Of a stretch of 64,000 nucleotides of DNA, positions 2,284 through 34,375 are shown piece by piece. Positions within the stretch are counted from its first letter, which is position 1. Each line of letters begins with the position of its first letter. Position numbers and translations under genes: made by a program. The notes under the pieces were generated by a model that was not told the DNA's origin, searched no databases, and worked only from the letters and a program-made list of their open reading frames with translations. The stretch spans positions 1 to 64,000 of the IMG/VR virus record IMGVR_UViG_3300041411_000080. The stretch is one strand, 5' to 3'.

Positions 2284-3244
2284 GTTCTAGAATCTCCTTT
2301 ACTTCTTTTTGAGTATAACCACGGTTACCCGGACGCTGGGTTTGAAGGACGTTCAGTACCGCCAAAGGGCATAGGCTACTACGAACCGATGCTTCATGTT
2401 TAAACGGTTCTTCTGAATCCAACCACTTATTCATCTGCTTCGTGTAACGATGCAATGGTCCGTAAATATCTTCATCGCTCAACTGCCATGGTTTAGGATG
2501 AACGATAATCCATTCAGGATCAACCCCATTGCCAGCGATACATTTAACCAACAAGATAGCCTTATTATCCATCTTATCAGTCAGGTTAGCAAAGATCGCA
2601 TCATTGGTCAGTGACTGATGATCTTCAGTGAAAGCCCGGCGTGCTTTGGAAGCTAGACGACCCGCTGCACAAGCCTCACCAATCGCCCATACGGCTTCAA
2701 CGCGAGTATCGTAATAGATACTAGCTTTACCCTGTACCGGGTAGGTAACGATCGGTTCCACGTTGTTACCCAGTTGACACGACTTACCGACATAATGAAG
2801 GCTGATAGGTTTCGAGGTATTAACCAGAATACCAAAGTCATGTTCCCATGTAAACCATTCAGGACGAGCCTTAGTGGAGAACTTGGTTGACATCGATCCG
2901 CCGTCCATGAATGGCTTGGCGGTATCAAGCATTTCACCGATGTCAGACATCAATGCCTTCCAGAGCTTTTCAGAACCCAGTTCCTTACAACTCCCCGAGA
3001 TACGGTACTGAGTAGGACCAGCAGCATCCGAGATACCACCTTCTTTCAATACGATCTTCTCGATACGTACCTGCGGATAGATGAAGATATAATCCGCAGG
3101 GCGAACATCGTCCAGTAGTAGACGATAATGCGCAACGATTTCTTTGATTCGGTATTGAATCCACTTACCAGCCAATGCCATCTCTGGTGTCTTCGGTACA
3201 CCACGTCTTACCCACAAGGTAAGCTCATCTTTCACACGACTCAT
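2273..3244 (-). CDS. hypothetical protein, paralogue group A (323 aa)
   Basis: VWAIGEACAAGRL and DPEWIIV; AGGAG SD downstream of an early promoter. Confidence 0.75.
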   Translation of the reverse strand: MSRVKDELTLWVRRGVPKTPEMALAGKWIQYRIKEIVAHYRLLLDDVRPADYIFIYPQVRIEKIVLKEGGISDAAGPTQYRISGSCKELGSEKLWKALMSDIGEMLDTAKPFMDGGSMSTKFSTKARPEWFTWEHDFGILVNTSKPISLHYVGKSCQLGNNVEPIVTYPVQGKASIYYDTRVEAVWAIGEACAAGRLASKARRAFTEDHQSLTNDAIFANLTDKMDNKAILLVKCIAGNGVDPEWIIVHPKPWQLSDEDIYGPLHRYTKQMNKWLDSEEPFKHEASVRSSLCPLAVLNVLQTQRPGNRGYTQKEVKEILEHVL

Positions 3245-3275
3245 TGGATACTCCTAATGTTTGGGATACACAGCT

Positions 3276-3296
3276 GTAATGTAGATGTGAAATAAA
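3276..3296 (-). promoter_or_regulatory. phiKZ-type early promoter
   Basis: minus strand TTTATTTCACATCTACATTAC, variant of a motif recurring 10 times. Confidence 0.6.
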
Positions 3297-3298
3297 TT

Positions 3299-3320
3299 GA
3301 GATGGCCAAAAGGCCACCTC
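3299..3320 (-). terminator. intrinsic terminator
   Basis: GAGGTGGCC-TTTT-GGCCATCTC followed by AATTTATTT. Confidence 0.65.
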
Positions 3321-3332
3321 GATCAGGTTTAT

Positions 3333-4289
3333 TTACACTTCAGCGACTTCACCAACAGTCTCATCTTCAATAGCCAGAGCTGTACCATCATAGACGGTTT
3401 CTTCTTGGGTTTCGAAGGTTGCGTATTCCATGGTCTTGAAGAAGCGCATGTCAGTTGTGTCGATTGCGCTGTTCCAACGAAGGGAAGTGAACGGCAATGG
3501 AGTTTCCATCATGTTCTTCATGTTGATGTTCACATAGCGAACACCTTCCACCACCCAACGATTGCTTTCGTCAAGGTTACTCACAACCCAGTTACCACCA
3601 GCCGGATTCTGGACGTGTACCCATACCAACAGGTTATGCCATTGGATGTTCGGGTGACTACGCATCATCTGCTTGATGTTGATGCGCGCGCCAGTACCGA
3701 CACCGGCTTTAAACATACTTTCACGCTCAGCAGCAATACGACCAGCGTGACTACGGGCGTAGTACTGCCATACACGACGGAACTTATCGACCGCAGTCGG
3801 TTCACCCATTACGGTCAGGCCGTTCAGTGGGGAATTGAAGTGACCGTCCCAGCTTGGGATGTCGTCGCCGGTTGCGTTCCACTGTTCAGCACCTTTACGG
3901 AGCAGTACTTGTGCAGGGCCAGCAACCATTGCCCACGGATCAGGCATCCCACCGTTATCCAGATAGGATTCCAGACGTACGAACTTGCTCTGGTACTTAG
4001 CCAGAATAGCTGCCAGCTCTTGCAGGATGTAGTGCAGGCGAGCGAACTGGTATTGGTTTGTACCCGTATGGCGGATAGGGAATACCAAGGTCAGGTTGCA
4101 ACCATAGCTCTCGTTACCGTTATGGGTAACAGCAGGCTTGACGTGGTCATGGTGATCCATCAGCTCTTTATGAACCGACAGCAGCGCATTGATGTCAGCC
4201 AGCAGATCGATTTCATTTTTGAATGCTTCACGGTCGTTAGCGCCTTGCATGTAAGCGATAGTTACACTAACGGTGTTCGGTTTGGACAT
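3333..4289 (-). CDS. hypothetical protein, paralogue group A (318 aa)
   Basis: LTVMGEPTAVDKFRRVWQYY matches the motif in 1414..2283. Confidence 0.75.
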   Translation of the reverse strand: MSKPNTVSVTIAYMQGANDREAFKNEIDLLADINALLSVHKELMDHHDHVKPAVTHNGNESYGCNLTLVFPIRHTGTNQYQFARLHYILQELAAILAKYQSKFVRLESYLDNGGMPDPWAMVAGPAQVLLRKGAEQWNATGDDIPSWDGHFNSPLNGLTVMGEPTAVDKFRRVWQYYARSHAGRIAAERESMFKAGVGTGARINIKQMMRSHPNIQWHNLLVWVHVQNPAGGNWVVSNLDESNRWVVEGVRYVNINMKNMMETPLPFTSLRWNSAIDTTDMRFFKTMEYATFETQEETVYDGTALAIEDETVGEVAEV

Positions 4290-4360
4290 TACCTTTCCTC
4301 GGAATAATTAAGATGGTTGGGGAACAGTGTCCCCATTGTATTAGCTTAGCCCGTATTAGC

Positions 4361-4834
4361 TTACTTCTGTGGTGGTGCTGCTGGCAAGAAGCTAATGGTT
4401 TGCTGGAGATAGCCCATGTCCTGGAGGTTGAATCGACCTTTATTAACCGGGTTATGTGCAATCTCACCAAATGAAAGAGTCGTGCCACCTGGATTGAGTG
4501 GTTGGCTCGAGACGCTGTTCTTAGTTACTGTGATGATCCAGCCATCGGCAATCACGACAACCGTCACATTGGTCTTACCGATGAAGTCACGAATATGATC
4601 GGCAGTCAGACAGGTTTTATCCTTGAGCTTATGCTCGATCTCCAGCAATGCATCGATGTGACCGATAGCGAAATAAGCTTGTACCTGTGGGCGGTCCCCG
4701 GTCTCGAACAGGTATTCAGAACGCATGCGTGGAGCGCCTTCAGCAGTTCTCAGTGCCTGAATAAAGGTTACATTGTCGTTAGCGCGATAACCGTAAACAA
4801 CACCTTGTGGTACAGCGTGAAGAATGAAAGACAT
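4361..4834 (-). CDS. hypothetical protein, possible Ntn-hydrolase/proteasome-beta-like fold
   Basis: MSFILH start, YFAIGHIDAL, VVVIADGWIITV, LSFGE pattern. Confidence 0.4.
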   Translation of the reverse strand: MSFILHAVPQGVVYGYRANDNVTFIQALRTAEGAPRMRSEYLFETGDRPQVQAYFAIGHIDALLEIEHKLKDKTCLTADHIRDFIGKTNVTVVVIADGWIITVTKNSVSSQPLNPGGTTLSFGEIAHNPVNKGRFNLQDMGYLQQTISFLPAAPPQK

Positions 4835-4843
4835 CTTGAATCC

Positions 4844-5011
4844 TTAGCGGTGAATGATCAGAGTAGACCAAGTGGATACGAGTAACAGAATGAGTGCAAC
4901 AGTCAGAACTTCACGACGGGCGGGAGCATGGCTCTTAAAGCACAATGCTAACCAGCCCATCCAAGTAATGATCGTAACAACCCACAACAGTCCGATGAGT
5001 GTAGGGTCCAT
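4844..5011 (-). CDS. 55-aa two-TM membrane protein (below ORF-track cutoff)
   Basis: MDPTLIGLLWVVTIITWMGWLALCF...VLTVALILLLVSTWSTLIIHR; AGGA SD; fills the gap exactly. Confidence 0.75.
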   Translation of the reverse strand: MDPTLIGLLWVVTIITWMGWLALCFKSHAPARREVLTVALILLLVSTWSTLIIHR

Positions 5012-5018
5012 AAAGGTC

Positions 5019-5453
5019 CTAGAAGTAGTTGGTTGAATCGACGGTCCAGTGCAACGGAAGTTGAATCCCCTTCATCGCCGATTGTACCTCAGAAGGAGTG
5101 CAACCGATACTGAAAGCATGGTTCCCTTCCACGTAATCTTCGAACGTTCGGGCAGCGTTGCGGTAAATATAGAAGCGCTTGGTGGTAGCCACGAAGATAC
5201 GCACGTCATGCTGACTGCTGAGTTCGATCAGCTTTTCTTCAGACAGATTGTTAGTGAGCCGCAATACGGTAGCCACGAAATTAGTCTGGACAGCCGACCC
5301 GGTTACCCACAGTCCGATTGGAGAACAGATGTTACCATCAGGCTCTGTGAACAAGCGTGCTGTCGATTGGGAAATGTAAGCCCAATCCTTAGCGATGGAT
5401 TTCAACCCACCGAACTTAAGGGTCCGTTCGGTGATGTCAATATAGAAGCTCAT
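5019..5453 (-). CDS. hypothetical protein, possible Ntn-hydrolase-like fold
   Basis: MSFYID start, LWVTGSAVQ, RIFVATTKRFYIY, AFSIGC. Confidence 0.4.
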   Translation of the reverse strand: MSFYIDITERTLKFGGLKSIAKDWAYISQSTARLFTEPDGNICSPIGLWVTGSAVQTNFVATVLRLTNNLSEEKLIELSSQHDVRIFVATTKRFYIYRNAARTFEDYVEGNHAFSIGCTPSEVQSAMKGIQLPLHWTVDSTNYF

Positions 5454-5695
5454 GCCGTCTCCTTGGGTTTGATCGCCCGAATGTTAAAACCTTCAGGGAT
5501 GTCAGCAATCTTTTGACCGAGAGTGTTAACCCGGAAGAAGAAGTCATAACCGAAGAGATGTTTCTCTTCGTCATGCACCAGTTGCACACTACCGTCTTGA
5601 ATGTAGATGTCACGAGCTGGGAGGAACTTGTGACCATGCGAACGAGATTGGTAGATACCGTTCGGCACCGTTTGACCATTTAGTTCACGACTCAT
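5450..5695 (-). CDS. hypothetical protein (81 aa)
   Basis: ORF tiles in operon. Confidence 0.7.
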   Translation of the reverse strand: MSRELNGQTVPNGIYQSRSHGHKFLPARDIYIQDGSVQLVHDEEKHLFGYDFFFRVNTLGQKIADIPEGFNIRAIKPKETA

Positions 5696-5698
5696 TAC

Positions 5699-5887
5699 TT
5701 AATCCTTTTTGTAGTACTTCGATTTAAGACTGTCTGCCAAACCATAGTCCGGGTCACGTACGGGTTCAATCCCATCTGTTGTACCGGTCATGATACGAGG
5801 TGGTGCATGACGAGGCATTTCTGCTACTACACGAGTATTAGTAATGCCTGCCTTCAATACTTCTTCTCTTAACTTTTCCCAATTCAT
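5699..5887 (-). CDS. 62-aa stand-alone fragment of ribonucleotide reductase alpha (NrdA-like)
   Basis: NWEKLREEVLKAGITNTRVVAEMP...TGTTDGIEP matches the class Ia NrdA WE.LR..I...G..N....A.MP...T.GIEP segment; AGGAG SD before ATG 5887. Confidence 0.7.
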   Translation of the reverse strand: MNWEKLREEVLKAGITNTRVVAEMPRHAPPRIMTGTTDGIEPVRDPDYGLADSLKSKYYKKD

Positions 5888-28572: not shown

Positions 28573-28594
28573 AAGGGCTCCCGAAGGAACCCTT
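28573..28594 (-). terminator. intrinsic terminator, cUUCGg loop
   Basis: AAGGGTTCC-TTCG-GGAGCCCTT-TTCTATTTT. Confidence 0.75.
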
Positions 28595-28597
28595 AGG

Positions 28598-28834
28598 TTA
28601 TTTAGGTACGTTTTCTTTATCAAGCCAGTCTGAGATAATTTCATCTGTAACTTCTCGACCTTGCCTGCTGAATAAGGCTTTTACATCGGCAACTGATGCG
28701 AGGATAGGCTCCATACCACTACGGAACTTATCAAGCTGCTTACACTCGTAGTAATACACCCGCTCATCAAGTGTAAGTGGAACACCCTCAGCGATCTTGG
28801 TATCGATCTTAACACGAGTTTCAGTTTTCATCAA
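28598..28834 (-). CDS. hypothetical protein (78 aa)
   Basis: coupled to the thyA stop. Confidence 0.75.
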   Translation of the reverse strand: MMKTETRVKIDTKIAEGVPLTLDERVYYYECKQLDKFRSGMEPILASVADVKALFSRQGREVTDEIISDWLDKENVPK

Positions 28835-30276
28835 ACGGCTACCTTACCGGCGATGTGTGGATGTGATTCATACCCGAGGATAACGAAATCGTCCGGTGTA
28901 ATCTCACGCTGGTCTTTACCATACACTTCGGGCTTGAACAGGATGCGGGGTGTATCGTACGGTTCACGAGTCAGCTGAAGATCAGTTTGTTCCTGATGAT
29001 TCGAATAAATGTGGCAGTCCCCGCCAGTCCAGATGAACTCTTCCGCAGCCATGTTGAACTGGTTAGCGAGTTGGTGAGTCATCAACGAATAGAAGGTGAT
29101 GTTGAACGGCTTACCGAGGAAGGTATCCACCGAACGCTGATACAGATGGCAGCTCAGACCACGGCGTGGTGCCTGTACATTATCAAGCCAACTATGCATG
29201 AACTCTTCAGTGACATCACTTGGCTTATTCAAGGCACACAGACTACTCTTGAAATTTTCCACTGAACGAATCGGTGGCAACCCGCGAGCTGGATCAAATG
29301 CTGCTTGAGCATCTAGTCGGTCTTGATATGCATTGAGGCGTTCTTCCAGATTCAGTTCACGAGTCCAGAACTGGAAGAAGCAGTGGCATGGCGGGAGAGC
29401 CTGATCTTCTACCAGACGTGGGTCCCATGCACAGACGATAATCCGACGGGAGTCAGGACCATTAGCCAGCTGATCCATTACATCTTGCAGTTGGTCAATA
29501 CGACGACGGATAACACATTGGTCAGTCGCAGTATCTGTACCCGGAATGTCTACAACGAAAGTGAAACCACGTTTCTCGTAATCCACCCATTCCAACTTAG
29601 GGATGATACGGACATCATCGATGTTCCGCCACGTCTTACCGTACACTGCACCCAGATCACCACCGATCAAACGTTGTGGTTCGGATTTGAAGAACAGTCG
29701 ATGTAGACGCTTCATGCACTCAAAACCGAAGTTGGTCGCATGGGTAGCATCAGGTGACTCGACTTCTTTCCATTTAACAAGATTAACCTTAACGATCTTC
29801 TTAACGTCTTCACGATCTTTGATGTTAGGGTACTGTGCCCAGAATGCTTCAACTCCTTCAGGACTCAGTTCCGCGAGGAAGCTCTGGATATCCTCAATAG
29901 CGATATCGTTCTCGACGTCGAAGGTAGTGAACACAAGTACCCACTTACCGTCAATGTGCTTATCGATCTTGATGGTAAGATCGTATTCATCCAATGGTGC
30001 GTATTCAGCGGTTTCTGGTTTAACCCATTCGTTCCAGATACGTACACCATTACGGATCAGGTAGTCTACACGAGTATCACCAGAAGACATCCAGATCAGT
30101 TCATGGATTACCGAGTGAAGGTGAATCTTCTTGGTGGTTACCACAGGCAACTTATTGTTACGCAGATCGTAACGTTCGTGTTGACCAAACATGGACTGTG
30201 TGCCAGTACCAGTACGGTCACCTTTAAAGATGCCGAGGTCTTTGATCATTTGAAGCGATTGAAGATACTGATGCAT
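28831..30276 (-). CDS. thyA: thymidylate synthase with three insertions
   Basis: VTTKK, IWNEW, LGAVYG, SRRII..AW, ALPPCH, YQRSVD.FLG.PFN, GDCHIY.NH. Confidence 0.95.
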   Translation of the reverse strand: MHQYLQSLQMIKDLGIFKGDRTGTGTQSMFGQHERYDLRNNKLPVVTTKKIHLHSVIHELIWMSSGDTRVDYLIRNGVRIWNEWVKPETAEYAPLDEYDLTIKIDKHIDGKWVLVFTTFDVENDIAIEDIQSFLAELSPEGVEAFWAQYPNIKDREDVKKIVKVNLVKWKEVESPDATHATNFGFECMKRLHRLFFKSEPQRLIGGDLGAVYGKTWRNIDDVRIIPKLEWVDYEKRGFTFVVDIPGTDTATDQCVIRRRIDQLQDVMDQLANGPDSRRIIVCAWDPRLVEDQALPPCHCFFQFWTRELNLEERLNAYQDRLDAQAAFDPARGLPPIRSVENFKSSLCALNKPSDVTEEFMHSWLDNVQAPRRGLSCHLYQRSVDTFLGKPFNITFYSLMTHQLANQFNMAAEEFIWTGGDCHIYSNHQEQTDLQLTREPYDTPRILFKPEVYGKDQREITPDDFVILGYESHPHIAGKVAV

Positions 30277-30318: not shown

Positions 30319-30723
30319 CTATTGGGTAGAACTTAGACCATGGAAACCTGGGATGTTATGCTCTGGTTCAACCATATCCAAATAAGCAATGTCCTGACTG
30401 AGTTCAGTAGACCGAACCCAGCCAAGCATGTCCGCCAGTGAACCCGCCGTAGCTGCACAGTAGATAGCAGCGTAAGGAACGTTAACCACTTTACCCTCTG
30501 GGAAGGTCACAGCAACGTGATCTTCATTTAATACCGTTCTGGTATTACGGGTGATAGAGCCCAAGGCTAGAGACATAACGTCGGCCCCTTCTGCACCGGT
30601 AATCAATGGCAAAACCTCAGGGGCTAATGCCACTGTAATCCAAAGATCCAGTGGATCGGCTATCATTTCCATCCGCTCGATTGCTTCACCAAGGTGTTGC
30701 TTAACAGCTTCGTCACGAGACAT
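30319..30723 (-). CDS. divergent SspB-like protein
   Basis: VNVPYAAIYCA parallels LEIPYTAVYAA of the neighbour and SspB VSVPLAAVLAI. Confidence 0.45.
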   Translation of the reverse strand: MSRDEAVKQHLGEAIERMEMIADPLDLWITVALAPEVLPLITGAEGADVMSLALGSITRNTRTVLNEDHVAVTFPEGKVVNVPYAAIYCAATAGSLADMLGWVRSTELSQDIAYLDMVEPEHNIPGFHGLSSTQ

Positions 30724-30725
30724 AA

Positions 30726-31898
30726 TTATGCTTCCGCCATGGTTGGAACTTTCTTTGGTTTACCGGTGAGCACTTTCAGCCAAGAAGGACGAGCCTTACG
30801 CTTACCCGGCCAAGTGCATTTGGTTACATCCAGATCAGGGAAGAAGCAGCTATTGCCATTAGCCCCATCGGAACGAAGCTCTGGTTGGGTAGACTTCATG
30901 GCATTCGCTATAACGAACTTATCGGTAGGAGCGAGCTTCTCAAGAGCTTCACGACGAGCCAACTTTTCACGATGTACGGTATCGATCCAAGGCATACTGG
31001 CTTGAGGCTTCTGCTTACCGCCTTCGATTACGGTCCAATTACGATCACGCATTTTAGTTTCCAATGTGTCATGGCCGATCATGCGACCCCATTCACCTTG
31101 TGGTTTAAGGTCAACCTTACCGGGAAAGTTAAGGATGGTAGCGTCACCACTGAAAGTAGCATTGCCCTTATCACCGAAATCAACTTTGAAGACGTTGGTA
31201 TCTTCTTTGATTGGACTAGCCAGTATAACCAACTTACCTTCAGAGTCAACTTTGAAACCATCACATTGAATAGACATACCTTGTTTACGCCATGATTCAT
31301 TCAATGCGTCGATTTCTGCTTGGGTTGGAATTGATACCTCAACCGTAGTACCATCAGTCTTAACTACTGATACAGTCGACTCAGGCGTAGCTACGTCAAT
31401 CGCCGCCAACTCTCGGGCTTTGATATCGGCACGGAGAGCAGCCAACTCTTCATCGGTGATCTCATCAATGCTCTCAACATGACCGTTGTTGAAAGTAATG
31501 CGATGTTTACCATTATCCAGTACTTCGACACCAACTGGTTCGATGCCATCTGGAAGATCCAATTCAACATCACCGTAATCTTCGAAGTAAGGGAAGATGT
31601 TAGGGATACCTGTGGTAGGATCTTCAGCAGCATATACTGCGGTGTAAGGAATCTCCAGTTGGATCTCCTTACCTTGACGACGGGACCAGAAACTGAACGA
31701 CTCATCACCGGTAGTGAAGTGACGGGTAGCATTCGCTGAGATGTTCAAACAAATCATCCCAGAGACGGGGTTCATATCCTCGAGGTAGTCCTTTGGATCG
31801 AACTGTGCAGCCTGTACGTAGATGTGCCATTTGGCAGCATTCTCGGTAACGAACCAATCCAGCAATGCTTGAAACGTAACTTTAGCCATGGGTATCAT
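30726..31898 (-). CDS. sspB: SspB-like ClpXP adaptor with a long acidic linker
   Basis: ALLDWF...LNISANAT...FWSRRQG..QLEIPYTAVYA; C-terminal RPSWLKV resembles the XB ClpX-binding tail. Confidence 0.7.
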   Translation of the reverse strand: MIPMAKVTFQALLDWFVTENAAKWHIYVQAAQFDPKDYLEDMNPVSGMICLNISANATRHFTTGDESFSFWSRRQGKEIQLEIPYTAVYAAEDPTTGIPNIFPYFEDYGDVELDLPDGIEPVGVEVLDNGKHRITFNNGHVESIDEITDEELAALRADIKARELAAIDVATPESTVSVVKTDGTTVEVSIPTQAEIDALNESWRKQGMSIQCDGFKVDSEGKLVILASPIKEDTNVFKVDFGDKGNATFSGDATILNFPGKVDLKPQGEWGRMIGHDTLETKMRDRNWTVIEGGKQKPQASMPWIDTVHREKLARREALEKLAPTDKFVIANAMKSTQPELRSDGANGNSCFFPDLDVTKCTWPGKRKARPSWLKVLTGKPKKVPTMAEA

Positions 31899-32201: not shown

Positions 32202-32223
32202 GCTCCTACCCGAAGGTAGGAGC
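32202..32223 (-). terminator. intrinsic terminator, cUUCGg loop
   Basis: GCTCCTACC-TTCG-GGTAGGAGC-TTTCTTTT. Confidence 0.85.
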
Positions 32224-32232
32224 GATATGCCG

Positions 32233-32661
32233 TTACTGAGGGTTGTAGTCGATGTGACGAGTGGCGTCAATCATATCGAACGCAAGGATGTTAGTAATCT
32301 TACCTGCGGTGGTTTCGTGTTTACGAACCGAGATAGAGAACTCCTTGTGTTTAGGTTCTGTTTGGAGACGCACGAAAGTTTCTGCGAATGGACCGTAAGG
32401 TTCACAAGTAAAACTGACGCTATCCTCAGACCAGACTGGATTGATCAACCGGCAACATACGCGATCCATGTTAACTTCACGCATACGTCGGAACCACCAA
32501 GTGATATCCAGATCCCCACGGATAGGGGAACCGAACTCACAATACACTCCATCCTTAACACATGGCTGCTTAAGGAATTCCTCAAGTGCAATGCGAAAGG
32601 CGGGAGACTTACGGGTCAAATCGATTTCGTAATGCATATTACCCCAGCATGGCTCGTTCAC
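32233..32661 (-). CDS. degenerate T4 gp21-like (S77) prohead-protease-fold protein
   Basis: CEFGSP...DRVC...PYGP...FSISVR...FDMI. Confidence 0.4.
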   Translation of the reverse strand: MNEPCWGNMHYEIDLTRKSPAFRIALEEFLKQPCVKDGVYCEFGSPIRGDLDITWWFRRMREVNMDRVCCRLINPVWSEDSVSFTCEPYGPFAETFVRLQTEPKHKEFSISVRKHETTAGKITNILAFDMIDATRHIDYNPQ

Positions 32662-34375
32662 GGACTTGAGCGAAAGTTACTTCATTAGGGAACTTGCCAT
32701 CTTTGAAGATGACTTTCAGTTCACCCGAGGAAGTATCGATCTCATCAATCCCGAAAGTTTGGTTCTGTTGCAGAACGTAGTCACCTGCTTCATCACGGAC
32801 AACCTTCAGGAAACCTTTAGCCGATTTCTTGTTGGTTTCACCTTCGGTCTTAGGTGCTTTGAACAGTTCAACGAACAGGTCGTCTACTTGAACAGCGGTA
32901 GCTTTAACCGCAAAGCCGAAAGTGTCACGGGTGTTGTGCTGATAGGTGTAAGAACCGATACCCAGTACCCAGTTAGACGATGCAAAGCCTTTCTTCATCA
33001 GGCGACGCATGATCTCTTCGGTACGGGCTACAGTGATCGAGTCACCATAGATCAAGCCGATACGTTCGTGGAGAACTTTGAAGCCTTTCTCGTTGATAGT
33101 ACCACCGAAGGTTTCCCACAGCAGTTCAACTGCACCACGTTGTTCAGGAGTCAGTTCAACAGGAACGTATTCGTACCCATCGCGCTCCAATACAACCTTG
33201 CGGATCTGACCATCGACACTGACGTATTTACCAGTGATAGATTTACCTGCATGAATCATGTCCGAGATTTCAGACACGGTGAAGATCTCAGCGCCACAGA
33301 TTACTTCTACAGGATCACCCGAGTCAGGACGAACCACAACTTTAGCCAGACCGTTAGCATCCGGTTGACGACCGAGGATCTCAGCCTTAATGGATGGGAA
33401 GACGTTGGTCAGAACACCCCAGAAGTCAAAGCTGTCCGATACCAGAGAGATGATCCCTTTAGGTACCTTAACAGTAATGGCTTCAATGATGAACTCACGT
33501 TCTGCTTCCAGCTTCAGGGTATTGAGTTCGTCAGCAGTAAAGTCTGCTTCGGTCTTACCCAGCTCCTTCAGCTTAACAGCCAGACGGTACAGGATGTTCG
33601 AAGTGGCGACGGCGTGTTCGGTAGCTACTACGGAAGCGGCCAGGAACTCTTTGTCAGCATCTGCAAAGTACATGTCTTCAACGAAGTCAATCGCTGGCAG
33701 AGTGTCAGTACCTTTGAAGAACACCAAGTGACCAGCGTTCGAGAATGCAGCTGCTTGTGGGTTGTTGATACCACGCAGTGCAAAGTCGTGACCTTGGAAG
33801 TCAACACCTTCGATTGGAGAACCAGTCAGGTGTGCGAAGTGTTCCAGTACACGGCGATACTCGTAAGCGATGGTGGTGTTGCAGACCATAGCCCAGATCA
33901 ACGAGGACATGAAGGTTTCGAGATAGTTCACAACCCAGTAGAACTCAGGGAGCGTATTGTAGATCACGTAACCCGGAACGTTCATGTTCAGGCGGGAACC
34001 TTCTGGTACCGACAGTACAGTAATAGGCAGGTAACCCAGATCGTGCAGAGCAGCCATGGCTTCGATGTCAACCATACCTTCACCGAGGTAAGTATCCATA
34101 CGACGCTTGTAACGACGGATCACAGTGGCCTTGTCTTTCTTGAAGAAACTGGCATCCCAGATACCGGCAACTTCACGCATTACGGCTTGGATACCAAACC
34201 AAACAACTTTGTGGTCCCAGAACATCGATTGGGACTTAGAACCCAGGAACAAGCGGTCAGCACGTGGAGTACCGTTACCGTAAGCGAAGTTAGTGCCGTA
34301 TGGATACAGAGGACCGTGCCCCATTTTGTAACCATCAGCTACGGTTGGACCAAACAGTTGAAAGTTAGTAGACAT
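32639..34375 (-). CDS. nadV: nicotinamide phosphoribosyltransferase-like protein (Namat-like in the NARP1 context)
   Basis: DGYKMGH, DFALRG, ATEHAV, VSDSFD, VRPDSGDP, IYGDSIT, G.GSYTYQHNTRDTFGFAVKAT. Confidence 0.9.
   Translation of the reverse strand: MSTNFQLFGPTVADGYKMGHGPLYPYGTNFAYGNGTPRADRLFLGSKSQSMFWDHKVVWFGIQAVMREVAGIWDASFFKKDKATVIRRYKRRMDTYLGEGMVDIEAMAALHDLGYLPITVLSVPEGSRLNMNVPGYVIYNTLPEFYWVVNYLETFMSSLIWAMVCNTTIAYEYRRVLEHFAHLTGSPIEGVDFQGHDFALRGINNPQAAAFSNAGHLVFFKGTDTLPAIDFVEDMYFADADKEFLAASVVATEHAVATSNILYRLAVKLKELGKTEADFTADELNTLKLEAEREFIIEAITVKVPKGIISLVSDSFDFWGVLTNVFPSIKAEILGRQPDANGLAKVVVRPDSGDPVEVICGAEIFTVSEISDMIHAGKSITGKYVSVDGQIRKVVLERDGYEYVPVELTPEQRGAVELLWETFGGTINEKGFKVLHERIGLIYGDSITVARTEEIMRRLMKKGFASSNWVLGIGSYTYQHNTRDTFGFAVKATAVQVDDLFVELFKAPKTEGETNKKSAKGFLKVVRDEAGDYVLQQNQTFGIDEIDTSSGELKVIFKDGKFPNEVTFAQVRERAMLG

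What the first reader, a model, noticed from the sequence alone, without database searches (positions are those of the whole stretch)
30319..31898. Tandem phage SspB-like adaptors: possible hijack of ClpXP
Seen: 30726 has an SspB core, a long acidic linker, an internal WTVIEGGK and a C-terminal RPSWLKV. 30319 has only a diverged core and no such tail. Known: SspB delivers substrates to ClpX via its C-terminal XB motif. Inference: redirected degradation of host defence proteins, with the tail-less copy as heterodimer partner or inhibitor.
Basis: partly seen in the sequence, partly recalled or inferred. Interest (0 to 1): 0.65.

Follow-up and report, generated by a model that had tools for sequence, protein, structure and literature searches.

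The report
Phage SspB-like adaptor with tail-less partner
A nucleus-forming jumbo phage of plant-associated Pseudomonas carries two adjacent genes with the fold of the bacterial ClpXP adaptor SspB. One has two ClpX-docking-like tail motifs and the other has none, so the phage probably tampers with the host protease, but no binding or substrate has been shown.

Summary
ORF A (30726-31898, minus strand, 390 aa) has an SspB substrate-binding fold. Its family profile hits solved SspB structures at E 6e-8, and Foldseek gives TM 0.73-0.75. The fold is followed by an acidic spacer and a basic tail. The tail carries NWTVIEGGK (residues 287-295) and RPSWLKV (370-376), and both motifs are conserved across 27 relatives.

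They fit one pattern, hydrophobic-x-V-I-x-G-G-K. This pattern grades through phiKZ gp232 (LTVIKGGKK) and Psa21 (HLRVIQGGKA) into the bacterial ClpX-binding XB motif (RPxLRVVK).

ORF B (30319-30723, 134 aa) has no Pfam hit. It folds confidently (pLDDT 89), and its best structural matches are all SspB (Z 9.1-7.6). It has no XB-like motif.

In 11 of 11 loci that hold a B homologue, an A-type gene lies directly upstream. The two genes usually overlap or sit within 2 nt of each other.

The phage encodes chimallin but neither ClpX nor ClpP. SspB-like genes in this phage family are already annotated (201phi2-1 gp347, RAY gp039). What is new is the dual-motif tail and the conserved tail-less paralogue.

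ClpX binding, A-B pairing and the substrates remain inferences. The single complex prediction gave no answer. "Degradation of host defence proteins" has no support.

The parts
30726..31898 (-). ORF A, 390 aa: chimallivirus SspB-like protein, orthologue of 201phi2-1 gp347 and Viktualia CDS0060
31584..31898 (-). ORF A residues 1-105: SspB substrate-binding/dimerisation fold (N-terminal helix plus small beta-barrel)
   Evidence: AF2 pLDDT about 80-88. The top 13 Foldseek PDB hits are all SspB, E 1e-6, TM 0.73-0.75. hhalign against canonical SspB gives prob 97%, E 5.6e-11.
31074..31583 (-). ORF A residues 106-275: acidic spacer (34 D/E against 16 K/R) with a lineage-specific insert of about 110 aa predicted as small alpha/beta modules
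31014..31043 (-). Internal XB-like motif RNWTVIEGGK (residues 286-295)
   Evidence: R286, W288 and G293 are invariant; V290, I291 and G294 are nearly invariant. The motif is found in 25 of 26 full-length A-type proteins; the L013 protein has HLKLIQ in its place. It matches the phiKZ gp232 C-terminus LTVIKGGKK.
30945..30998 (-). Conserved segment SMPWIDTVHREKLARREA (residues 301-318), predicted helix 304-322
30816..30875 (-). Conserved segment RSDGANGNSCFFPDLDVTKC (residues 342-361); function unknown
   Evidence: D344, G348, P354, L356, D357 and V358 are invariant; R342, S343, G345, F353, K360 and C361 are nearly invariant.
30759..30791 (-). C-terminal XB-like motif RPSWLKVLTGK (residues 370-380); 10 more residues follow before the stop codon
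   Evidence: R370, P371, W373, V376 and G379 are invariant. Compare bacterial RPSLRVVK and RPNLKVIK.
30721..30728 (-). Junction: ORF A stop TAA, 2 nt, ORF B start ATG (probable translational coupling)
   Evidence: The two genes overlap by 1-20 nt in 7 other loci.
30319..30723 (-). ORF B, 134 aa: SspB-fold paralogue without an XB-like motif; orthologue of 201phi2-1 gp349, Viktualia CDS0061 and PHIKZ236; phrog_30953
32202..32223 (-). Terminator-like hairpin upstream of the unit (9-bp stem, T run)
28573..28594 (-). Terminator-like hairpin downstream. The two hairpins bracket a unit of small ORF, ORF A, ORF B, thymidylate synthase and ORF78.

Best explanation
ORF A and ORF B form a conserved two-gene module of a subgroup of nucleus-forming jumbo phages (chimalliviruses).

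ORF A is a divergent member of the SspB adaptor family. It has an SspB cargo-binding/dimerisation domain, an acidic spacer and a basic tail of about 115 residues. The tail holds two copies of a ClpX-N-domain tethering (XB-like) motif of the form hydrophobic-x-V-I-x-G-G-K. The C-terminal copy is preceded by the same R-P as in bacterial RPxLRVVK.

The phage has no ClpX or ClpP. Homologues of ORF A stay in the cytoplasm, outside the phage nucleus. ORF A is therefore expected to dock on the zinc-binding N-domains of the host's ClpX and change what ClpXP degrades. It could do this by delivering whatever its SspB-like groove binds, and by competing with the host's SspB and other N-domain-dependent adaptors and substrates.

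ORF B is a paralogue of the ORF A core that lacks any tether. It is made from the same message, probably by coupled translation. It most likely works with ORF A, either as the second subunit of an asymmetric dimer or as a modulator.

Shown: the folds, the motifs and their conservation, the synteny, and the absence of phage ClpX and ClpP.

Inferred: ClpX binding, the A-B contact, the direction of the effect (delivery or blockade), and every substrate.
For: - Fold and family of ORF A.
- Motif continuum, from sequences fetched here. E. coli RPALRVVK. 76 gammaproteobacterial SspBs with RP[AS]LRVVK, RPTLTVVK, SHLKVIK or RPNLKVIK. Phage pf16 KPTLRVVK. RAY gp39 KPTLTVVK. Psa21, D6 and RVTF4 P[NH]L[TR][LV]IQGGK. 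phiKZ gp232 PKLTVIKGGKK. 201phi2-1 gp347 RPEWLQVHEGGLK plus internal GMSVIIGGAKP. ORF A RPSWLKVLTGK plus internal NWTVIEGGK. In the most divergent A-type proteins (L013 and Phabio gp349) the internal copy reads HLKLIQ, which is close to the bacterial type HLKVIK.
- An XB motif binds the ClpX zinc-binding domain wherever it sits in a polypeptide (PMC12373786).
- The phage genome encodes chimallin (66% identity to 201phi2-1 gp105) but no ClpX zinc-binding domain and no ClpP.
- Homologues are cytoplasmic. RAY gp039-GFP is cytoplasmic (PMC10299810). PHIKZ232-mNG is diffuse outside the shell (PMC10449902).
- ORF B fold. AF2 pLDDT 89. The top 17 Foldseek PDB rows are all SspB family. A search of 48,161 chains that does not depend on Foldseek puts all four SspB-family representatives on top, Z 9.1, 8.3, 8.1 and 7.6. 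In BFVD, phage SspB-likes follow its own orthologue. hhalign of the B family against the A family gives E 7e-5, against E 0.085 for canonical SspB, which suggests a duplication within the phage lineage.
- Linkage. In 11 of 11 loci with a B homologue, an A-type gene lies directly upstream. In 8 of the 10 loci where both gene ends were read, the genes overlap or lie within 2 nt (window and L013-L019). Terminator-like hairpins bracket the unit.
Against: - No binding was tested. The one complex job (ORF A core, ORF A tail and ORF B) scored ipSAE 0.00, which the tool rates as no answer.
- The motifs are not canonical XB. A tryptophan is inserted before or in place of the leucine, a GGK extension is added, and in ORF A the C-terminal copy is degenerate (LTGK) and lies 10 residues from the end.
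- The tail holds two further, equally conserved segments (residues 301-318 and 342-361) that have no counterpart in SspB and no explanation here.
- ORF A scores below Pfam's gathering threshold.
- The link between ORF B and the dual-motif tail is not strict. Phabio has an A-type protein but no B anywhere in its genome. In phiKZ the B homologue (PHIKZ236) lies 3 kb from gp232.
- The host is inferred, not known. The inference rests on relatives that infect Pseudomonas and on rhizosphere, leaf and soil metagenomes.
Confidence: 0.5

Rival explanations
1. ClpX decoy rather than adaptor. ORF A docks on the ClpX N-domains through its two motifs only to occupy them. This blocks host SspB, other N-domain-dependent adaptors and N-domain-dependent substrates, and so protects phage proteins from ClpXP. 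It delivers no cargo. ORF B could sequester degradation tags without delivering them.
For: There are two tethering-like motifs per chain, which would make four per homodimer. The tail is large and conserved beyond what tethering needs. A tail-less SspB fold is what a tag-sequestering protein would look like. The phage has no Clp components of its own.
Against: The SspB-like core of ORF A is itself strongly conserved, with 31 invariant positions in residues 1-105. That argues for a conserved ligand rather than a mere scaffold. Nothing distinguishes delivery from blockade in silico.
Confidence: 0.2
2. The SspB fold has been put to a use unrelated to ClpX. ORF A and ORF B are peptide-binding modules, and their GGK motifs and other tail segments bind a different partner. 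Candidates are a phage protein, the chimallin shell or import machinery, or another AAA+ machine.
For: PHIKZ232 was among six proteins enriched in a shell preparation and absent from virions (PMC10449902). In Psa21, D6 and RVTF4 the SspB-like gene is followed by an overlapping ORF of about 240 aa and a BCS1_N/AAA ATPase gene. The tail has conserved segments with no SspB counterpart. The motifs deviate from canonical XB.
Against: That AAA+ gene is absent from this phage. Tagged PHIKZ232 and RAY gp039 were diffuse in the cytoplasm, not on the shell. The R-P-x-hydrophobic-x-V pattern and the graded series towards bacterial XB are hard to explain without ClpX.
Confidence: 0.2
3. ORF B works on its own. 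It is neither a subunit nor a regulator of ORF A, and the adjacency reflects only common descent by tandem duplication and shared timing of expression.
For: Phabio keeps an A-type protein without any B. phiKZ keeps both genes 3 kb apart. The complex prediction gave no support (the tool says this is not evidence either way). ORF B has a conserved C-terminal peptide of its own.
Against: In 11 of 11 loci B follows A directly across pairs as divergent as 25-45% identity, and the genes mostly overlap. SspB-fold domains are dimeric in all solved structures listed (my reading of those entries; I did not compute it).
Confidence: 0.3

Closest known systems
Bacterial SspB (E. coli b3228, H. influenzae SspB; PDB 1OU9, 1OX9, 8ET3), the ClpXP specificity-enhancing adaptor
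   Same: ORF A has the same core fold (TM 0.73-0.75; profile E 6e-8). It has the same order of parts: core, acidic spacer, then a tether motif with the R-P-x-hydrophobic-x-V-V pattern. ORF B shares the core fold only.
   Different: ORF A is 390 aa against about 165 aa. It has a structured insert in the spacer, two tether-like motifs instead of one, a tryptophan and a GGK extension in the motifs, and two extra conserved tail segments. It scores below the Pfam threshold and sits in a phage operon with thymidylate synthase, not next to sspA. ORF B has no tether motif at all and no significant sequence match to canonical SspB (hhalign E 0.085).
Chimallivirus SspB-like proteins: 201phi2-1 gp347, Viktualia CDS0060, phiKZ gp232, RAY gp039 (PHROG 8945)
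   Same: ORF A is the orthologue of gp347 and CDS0060. It matches them at 30% identity over 97% of its length, sits at the same position between the NAMPT and thymidylate synthase genes, and has the same tail motifs. [quoted passage not shown]
   Different: RAY gp039 (150 aa) and pf16 gp18 (128 aa) are short and canonical, each with a single KPTL[TR]VVK end. phiKZ gp232 has a different middle part. None of these proteins has been tested for ClpX binding.
201phi2-1 gp349 / Viktualia CDS0061 / PHIKZ236 (phrog_30953, function unknown)
   Same: ORF B is their orthologue: 42% identity to gp349 and CDS0061, and profile E 2.7e-12 to PHIKZ236. BFVD gives TM 0.90 to gp349.
   Different: I found no function or fold assignment for this family in the libraries and papers searched. 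The SspB-fold assignment is made here.
Computationally designed SspB heterodimer (PDB 1ZSZ) and split or one-tailed SspB variants from ClpXP tethering studies
   Same: They show that an SspB dimer with unequal subunits can exist. From my own knowledge (Bolon et al. 2004, not checked here), the number of XB tails per dimer matters for delivery. An A-B pair would be a natural analogue with both tethers on one chain.
   Different: Those are engineered proteins. Whether ORF A and ORF B pair at all is not shown.

Membership tests
SspB (PF04386, ClpXP specificity-enhancing factor): ORF A | SspB substrate-binding domain (N-terminal helix plus small beta-barrel) | tested here: met
   Profile against PDB SspB gives E 6e-8 over residues 10-103. 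Foldseek gives TM 0.73-0.75, rmsd 2.5 A, 105 columns. hhalign against canonical SspBs gives prob 97%, E 5.6e-11.
SspB (PF04386): ORF A | Score at or above Pfam's gathering threshold (27 bits) | tested here: not met
   The score is 22.3 bits, E 1.4e-4. NCBIfam equivalog cut-offs are also not reached. Several close relatives carry a precomputed PF04386 hit.
SspB (PF04386): ORF A | C-terminal XB motif (R-P-x-L-R/T/K-V/I-V/I-K at the C-terminus) | tested here: inconclusive
   RPSWLKVL (370-377) and NWTVIEGGK (287-295) resemble RPSLRVVK and RPNLKVIK, and intermediates link them. However, a W is inserted, GGK is added, and the motif is not terminal in ORF A.
SspB (PF04386): ORF A | Binds the ClpX N-terminal zinc-binding domain and stimulates delivery of bound substrates to ClpXP | not tested
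This needs a biochemical assay.
SspB (PF04386): ORF A | Binds the ssrA tag or RseA in the peptide groove | not testable with these tools
SspB (PF04386): ORF A | Homodimer through the core domain | not tested
SspB-like fold: ORF B | SspB substrate-binding domain fold | tested here: met
   AF2 gives pLDDT 89 and pTM 0.82. The top 17 Foldseek rows are all SspB family, prob 0.87-1.0 but E only 0.008-0.08. VIA-align wide puts the four SspB-family representatives at ranks 1-4, Z 9.1-7.6, 97-98 residues aligned, with the next hit at Z 6.9. BFVD agrees.
SspB (PF04386): ORF B | Sequence membership (Pfam or NCBIfam hit, or a significant profile match to canonical SspB) | tested here: not met
   There is no Pfam or NCBIfam hit. 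hhalign against canonical SspB gives E 0.085. Only the match to the ORF A family is suggestive: E 7e-5, prob 62%.
SspB (PF04386): ORF B | XB tether motif | tested here: not met
   No such motif occurs in ORF B or in any of its 21 aligned relatives.
Chimallivirus (nucleus-forming jumbo phage): the genome | Encodes chimallin (ChmA) | tested here: met
   There is a 66% identical match to 201phi2-1 gp105 over 631 aa, E 7.5e-267, at G000 241410-243302.

The most novel reading that the evidence does not exclude
ORF A and ORF B form a natural asymmetric SspB-type heterodimer. One subunit carries both ClpX tethers in tandem on a single tail. The other carries none and contributes a second, different cargo groove. 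The phage would then recruit host ClpXP to a substrate set defined by two distinct grooves, which would be a new adaptor architecture.
Probability: 0.25. Interest if true: 0.75.

Novelty: new variant of a known kind. Interest (0 to 1): 0.5.

Why it matters
Nucleus-forming jumbo phages shield their DNA inside a protein shell. Their cytoplasmic proteins remain exposed to host proteases, and the host's cytoplasmic proteins remain within the phage's reach.

A phage-built ClpXP adaptor or decoy would be a direct handle on host proteolysis in this much-studied phage family. The culturable relatives 201phi2-1 (gp347/gp349) and phiKZ (gp232/gp236) make it testable now.

The dual-motif tail and the tail-less paralogue also bear on a basic question about AAA+ adaptors: how the number and placement of tethers set delivery efficiency.

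The practical gain is modest. The SspB-like annotation already exists. What is added here is the motif anatomy, the fold of an unannotated family (phrog_30953 / PHIKZ236) and its genetic linkage.

Tried and rejected
- Complex prediction with ORF A(1-112), ORF A(276-390) and ORF B as the scored partner gave ipSAE 0.00 in both runs, so the controls were not run. The tool's verdict is 'no answer', which is no evidence for or against binding. A first attempt found the machine busy.
- The search for related loci with the wide ORF B alignment failed because it had no conserved 7-10 column stretch. With the ORF A alignment it found only one further IMG/VR locus. Neighbourhoods were therefore taken from Logan contigs through the look-up of encoding contigs.
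- A word search with the tail alone (residues 276-390) found only one hit, a 180-aa protein on a 1.2-kb contig that is probably a fragment. There is no sign that the tail exists as a separate protein. All 18 hits of the whole-protein search align with the core as well.
- The idea that ORF B occurs only with dual-motif tails was rejected. Phabio has the tail but no B. phiKZ has B (PHIKZ236) away from gp232.
- A phage-encoded AAA+ partner was considered because of the Psa21-type synteny. That gene is absent from this genome, as are the ClpX zinc-binding domain and ClpP.
- I tried to reach Pseudomonas genomes for the host's own SspB and ClpX. Virus and W handles have no 'relatives'. The genome scan returned the 80 loci closest to E. 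coli SspB, and none was from Pseudomonas. pf16 gp18, described as close to P. putida SspB (PMC5587285), served as a proxy.
- No RNA run holds the region, so expression could not be checked and read laying was not used.
- Literature searches for phiKZ gp232 and gp236, ClpX with jumbo phages, and phage SspB found no functional test.
- A resemblance of the GG-K/Q/E ends to ubiquitin-like or Pup C-termini was considered and dropped. There is no beta-grasp fold, and no such system is known in the presumed host. This rests on my own knowledge and was not tested.
Full report
WHAT IS THERE

The window is the first 64 kb of a 320,858-bp virus record with direct terminal repeats. The genome encodes a chimallin 66% identical to 201phi2-1 gp105, so it is a nucleus-forming jumbo phage.

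Its nearest cultured relatives infect Pseudomonas. The NAMPT protein is 86% identical to that of phage Viktualia and 83% to Phabio. Near-identical DNA turns up in rhizosphere, leaf, soil and plant metagenomes. A plant-associated Pseudomonas host is therefore likely but not proven.

On the minus strand the local gene order is as follows:
- PRPP synthetase
- NAMPT
- a 142-aa ORF
- a small hydrophobic ORF
- ORF A (30726-31898, 390 aa)
- ORF B (30319-30723, 134 aa)
- thymidylate synthase (481 aa)
- a 78-aa ORF
- RNA ligase

Strong terminator-like hairpins at 32223-32202 and 28594-28573 bracket the stretch from the small ORF to the 78-aa ORF. The ORF A stop codon and the ORF B start codon are 2 nt apart: TAA-TT-ATG.

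ORF A

Single-sequence family scans agree with each other but are weak:
- Pfam SspB scores 22.3 bits, below the gathering score of 27.
- PHROG 8945 'SspB-like' gives E 2.6e-6.
- NCBIfam 'ClpXP specificity-enhancing factor' gives E 1.3e-7.

A word search found 17 relatives of 276-402 aa. Their alignment (A1) gives a profile that hits solved SspB structures at E 6e-8 over the whole substrate-binding domain. It matches a small alignment of canonical SspBs by hhalign at 97% probability, E 5.6e-11.

In the AlphaFold2 model, residues 1-105 have pLDDT of about 80-88. The 13 best Foldseek PDB hits are all SspB, with TM 0.73-0.75 and rmsd 2.5 A over 105 columns. The SspB core is therefore real.

Residues 106-275 are acidic, with 34 D/E against 16 K/R. 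Part of this stretch (121-229) is predicted as small alpha/beta modules. That part exists only in the six nearest relatives.

Residues 276-390 are basic and mostly predicted disordered, apart from a helix at 304-322. Yet this tail is the best-conserved part of the family. An HMM of the tail alone finds all A-type proteins, at E 1e-33 to 1e-52 for nine of the ten full-length ones and more weakly for the most divergent, L013.

The tail holds four conserved elements:
- RNWTVIEGGK (residues 286-295)
- SMPWIDxVxREKxxRREA (301-318)
- RSDGxxGxSxFFPDLDVxKC (342-361)
- RPSWLKVLTGK (370-380)

ARE THE TWO MOTIFS XB-LIKE?

Bacterial SspBs:
- E. coli SspB ends GGRPALRVVK.
- Among the 80 gammaproteobacterial loci fetched, 76 give a complete C-terminus. 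The ends are RPALRVVK (31), RPSLRVVK (14), RPTLTVVK, RGHLTLVK, SHLKVIK, RPNLKVIK and similar.

Phage proteins with a canonical short SspB:
- pf16 gp18 ends KPTLRVVK.
- RAY gp39 ends KPTLTVVK.

Other chimallivirus SspB-likes add GGK:
- Psa21 ends PNLTLIQGGKK.
- D6 ends PHLRVIQGGKA.
- RVTF4 ends PHLTVIQGGKA.
- phiKZ gp232 ends PKLTVIKGGKK.

The ORF A family has RPxW[LM]xV[IVLH]xGGK at the end and [WM]xVIEGG[KR] about 80 residues upstream (27 proteins). The internal copy of ORF A (WTVIEGGK) is nearly the phiKZ terminus (LTVIKGGK). In the most divergent A-type proteins (L013 and Phabio gp349) the internal copy reads HLKLIQ, which is close to the bacterial type HLKVIK.

So there is a graded natural series from the bacterial XB motif to both ORF A motifs. 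Published work shows that an XB peptide binds the ClpX zinc-binding domain wherever it sits in a chain (PMC12373786).

This is good comparative evidence, but it is still only sequence resemblance. ClpX binding was not tested.

In ORF A and its closest relative the terminal copy has lost the GG (LTGK or FAGK), and about 10 extra residues follow it.

ORF B

ORF B has no Pfam or NCBIfam hit. Its only family match is phrog_30953, of unknown function.

The word search gave four relatives. Because that left the protein open, I used the large representative search with their profile. It found 19 proteins, and 18 of them are about 120-150 aa long.

With the 22-sequence alignment A3, AlphaFold2 gives a confident model with pLDDT 89 and pTM 0.82. 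The structural searches agree:
- The top 17 Foldseek PDB rows are all SspB family, from E. coli, H. influenzae, Caulobacter and Agrobacterium. Probabilities are 0.87-1.0, but E-values are only 0.008-0.08.
- The search of 48,161 representative chains that does not depend on Foldseek places all four SspB-family representatives at ranks 1-4. Their Z scores are 9.1, 8.3, 8.1 and 7.6 with 97-98 residues aligned. The next hit is a designed SH3-like barrel at Z 6.9.
- In the viral library, ORF B's own orthologue 201phi2-1 gp349 comes first (TM 0.90). Several of the next dozen rows are phage SspB-like proteins, including the ORF A orthologue gp347 and the phiKZ gp232 orthologue of phage PA7.

Profile-profile comparison gives E 7e-5 (62% probability) between the B and A families, across the strands that end in VPYAAIYC (B) and IPYTAVY (A). 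Between B and canonical SpB the value is only E 0.085.

My reading is that ORF B is a strongly diverged paralogue of the phage's own SspB-like core. It has no XB-like motif. It does have a short conserved C-terminal peptide of its own, [LV]VxPxH[GND][IM]P.

LINKAGE OF A AND B

ORF B is 42% identical to both 201phi2-1 gp349 and Viktualia CDS0061. Each of these lies just downstream of the ORF A orthologue and upstream of thymidylate synthase.

I fetched contigs for seven further, increasingly distant B homologues. In every one the gene directly upstream has the SspB-like core and the A-type tail. Together with the window, L012, 201phi2-1 and Viktualia this makes 11 of 11. In eight of the ten loci where both gene ends were read, the genes overlap by 1-20 nt or lie 2 nt apart (the window and the seven contigs).

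The reverse does not hold:
- Phabio has an A-type protein (gp349, 238 aa) but no B anywhere in its genome.
- phiKZ has a B homologue, PHIKZ236 (E 2.7e-12), about 3 kb downstream of gp232, beyond the thymidylate synthase gene.
- RAY, Psa21 and the Ralstonia phage FLC4-3B have SspB-like genes but no B.

Both PHIKZ232 and PHIKZ236 appear as detected proteins in the size-exclusion proteomics supplement of PMC10449902.

MECHANISM

The phage has no ClpX zinc-binding domain and no ClpP. Tagged homologues stay in the cytoplasm, outside the phage nucleus (PMC10299810; PMC10449902).

The most economical reading is that ORF A docks on host ClpX through its XB-like motifs and alters ClpXP substrate choice. 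ORF B, made from the same message, would work with it.

From my own knowledge, not checked here, efficient delivery by SspB needs two tethers per dimer (Bolon et al. 2004). Two tethers on one chain plus a tail-less paralogue therefore suggests an asymmetric A-B dimer. That is the most novel reading, and I give it about 0.25.

The one complex prediction allowed contained the ORF A core, the ORF A tail and ORF B. It scored 0.00, which the tool itself rates as no answer.

I cannot tell delivery from blockade, and nothing points to any substrate.

Rivals, detailed in their own section:
- a ClpX decoy
- an SspB fold put to another use with another partner. This is prompted by the shell-fraction enrichment of PHIKZ232, by the BCS1-like AAA+ neighbour in Psa21-type phages (absent here) and by the two unexplained conserved tail segments.
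- an ORF B that acts alone

COMPARISON WITH WHAT IS KNOWN, AND NOVELTY

SspB-like genes in phages are on record:
- pf16 gp18 (PMC5587285)
- 201phi2-1 gp347, annotated 'SspB domain-containing protein'
- PHROG 8945

A tblastn search with E. coli SspB finds matches in 78 phage records, mostly jumbo phages of Pseudomonas, Erwinia and Ralstonia. I found no functional test of any of them.

ORF A is thus a new member of an annotated but uncharacterised group. Three things appear to be new:
- the anatomy of its tail: two XB-like motifs plus two further conserved segments
- the assignment of an SspB-like fold to the unannotated ORF B / gp349 / PHIKZ236 family
- the tight genetic coupling of the two genes

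I rate the finding a new variant of a known kind, with interest 0.5.

LIMITS

- The host is inferred.
- The alignments are shallow (18 and 22 sequences).
- The tail model has low confidence.

Noticed in passing
L020-L068 (Enterobacterales sspB loci); E. coli SspB residues about 127-138 (P0042): The supposedly variable linker of enterobacterial SspB holds a conserved motif (T)VMSVIDGD[KR]PD about 25-30 residues before the XB tail. It resembles the phage internal motif (WTVIEGGK; 201phi2-1 GMSVIIGGAKP). Shewanella has GLSVVEE at a similar place. I know of no function for it.
   Followed up: partly
window 28831-30276 (-): The thymidylate synthase is 481 aa, and its Pfam match is split in two by a large insert. 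Parts of the protein match separate small ORFs of phage Viktualia: CDS0062 at 35% over 108 aa, and CDS0064.
   Followed up: no
window 32639-34375 (-): NAMPT is 86% identical to that of Viktualia, while the neighbouring proteins are 30-66% identical to their Viktualia or 201phi2-1 counterparts. This suggests unusually strong constraint or recent exchange.
   Followed up: no
L103 (Psa21) 2974-5807; L104 (D6); L105 (RVTF4): In these Pseudomonas jumbo phages an SspB-like gene ends in P[NH]L[TR][LV]IQGGK. It is followed by an overlapping ORF of about 240 aa with no family, and then by a BCS1_N/AAA ATPase gene. This may be an adaptor plus AAA+ module. The ATPase is absent from the window's genome.
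   Followed up: partly
L108 405-812 (phiKZ 233404-233811, PHIKZ236): PHIKZ236 is a homologue of ORF B (profile E 2.7e-12). It lies just after thymidylate synthase gp235, 3 kb from the SspB-like gp232. The library holds no paper on it.
   Followed up: partly
window 30319-30380 (-), ORF B residues about 115-134; alignment A3: ORF B and its closer relatives share a short C-terminal peptide after the fold, [LV]VxPxH[GND][IM]P[KG][YF]. It lies in a low-confidence part of the model and may be a docking motif of its own.
   Followed up: no
L019 1267-3668: In this related contig the thymidylate synthase gene is split by a GIY-YIG / I-TevI-like homing endonuclease gene.
   Followed up: no
window 32233-32661 (-): This 142-aa ORF matches a 'head maturation protease' PHROG (7478, E 4e-13) and weakly matches Peptidase_S80 (21.7 bits, below the cut-off). 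It sits in a nucleotide-metabolism neighbourhood. It is 32% identical to Viktualia CDS0053, and Phabio gp342 carries the same annotation.
   Followed up: no
L011 (CAKLQH020000054.1, filed as 'Acinetobacter phage MD-2021a'): This 'phage' contig carries rpsI-sspA-sspB-accC, which is a bacterial chromosomal arrangement. The record is probably host DNA rather than phage.
   Followed up: no
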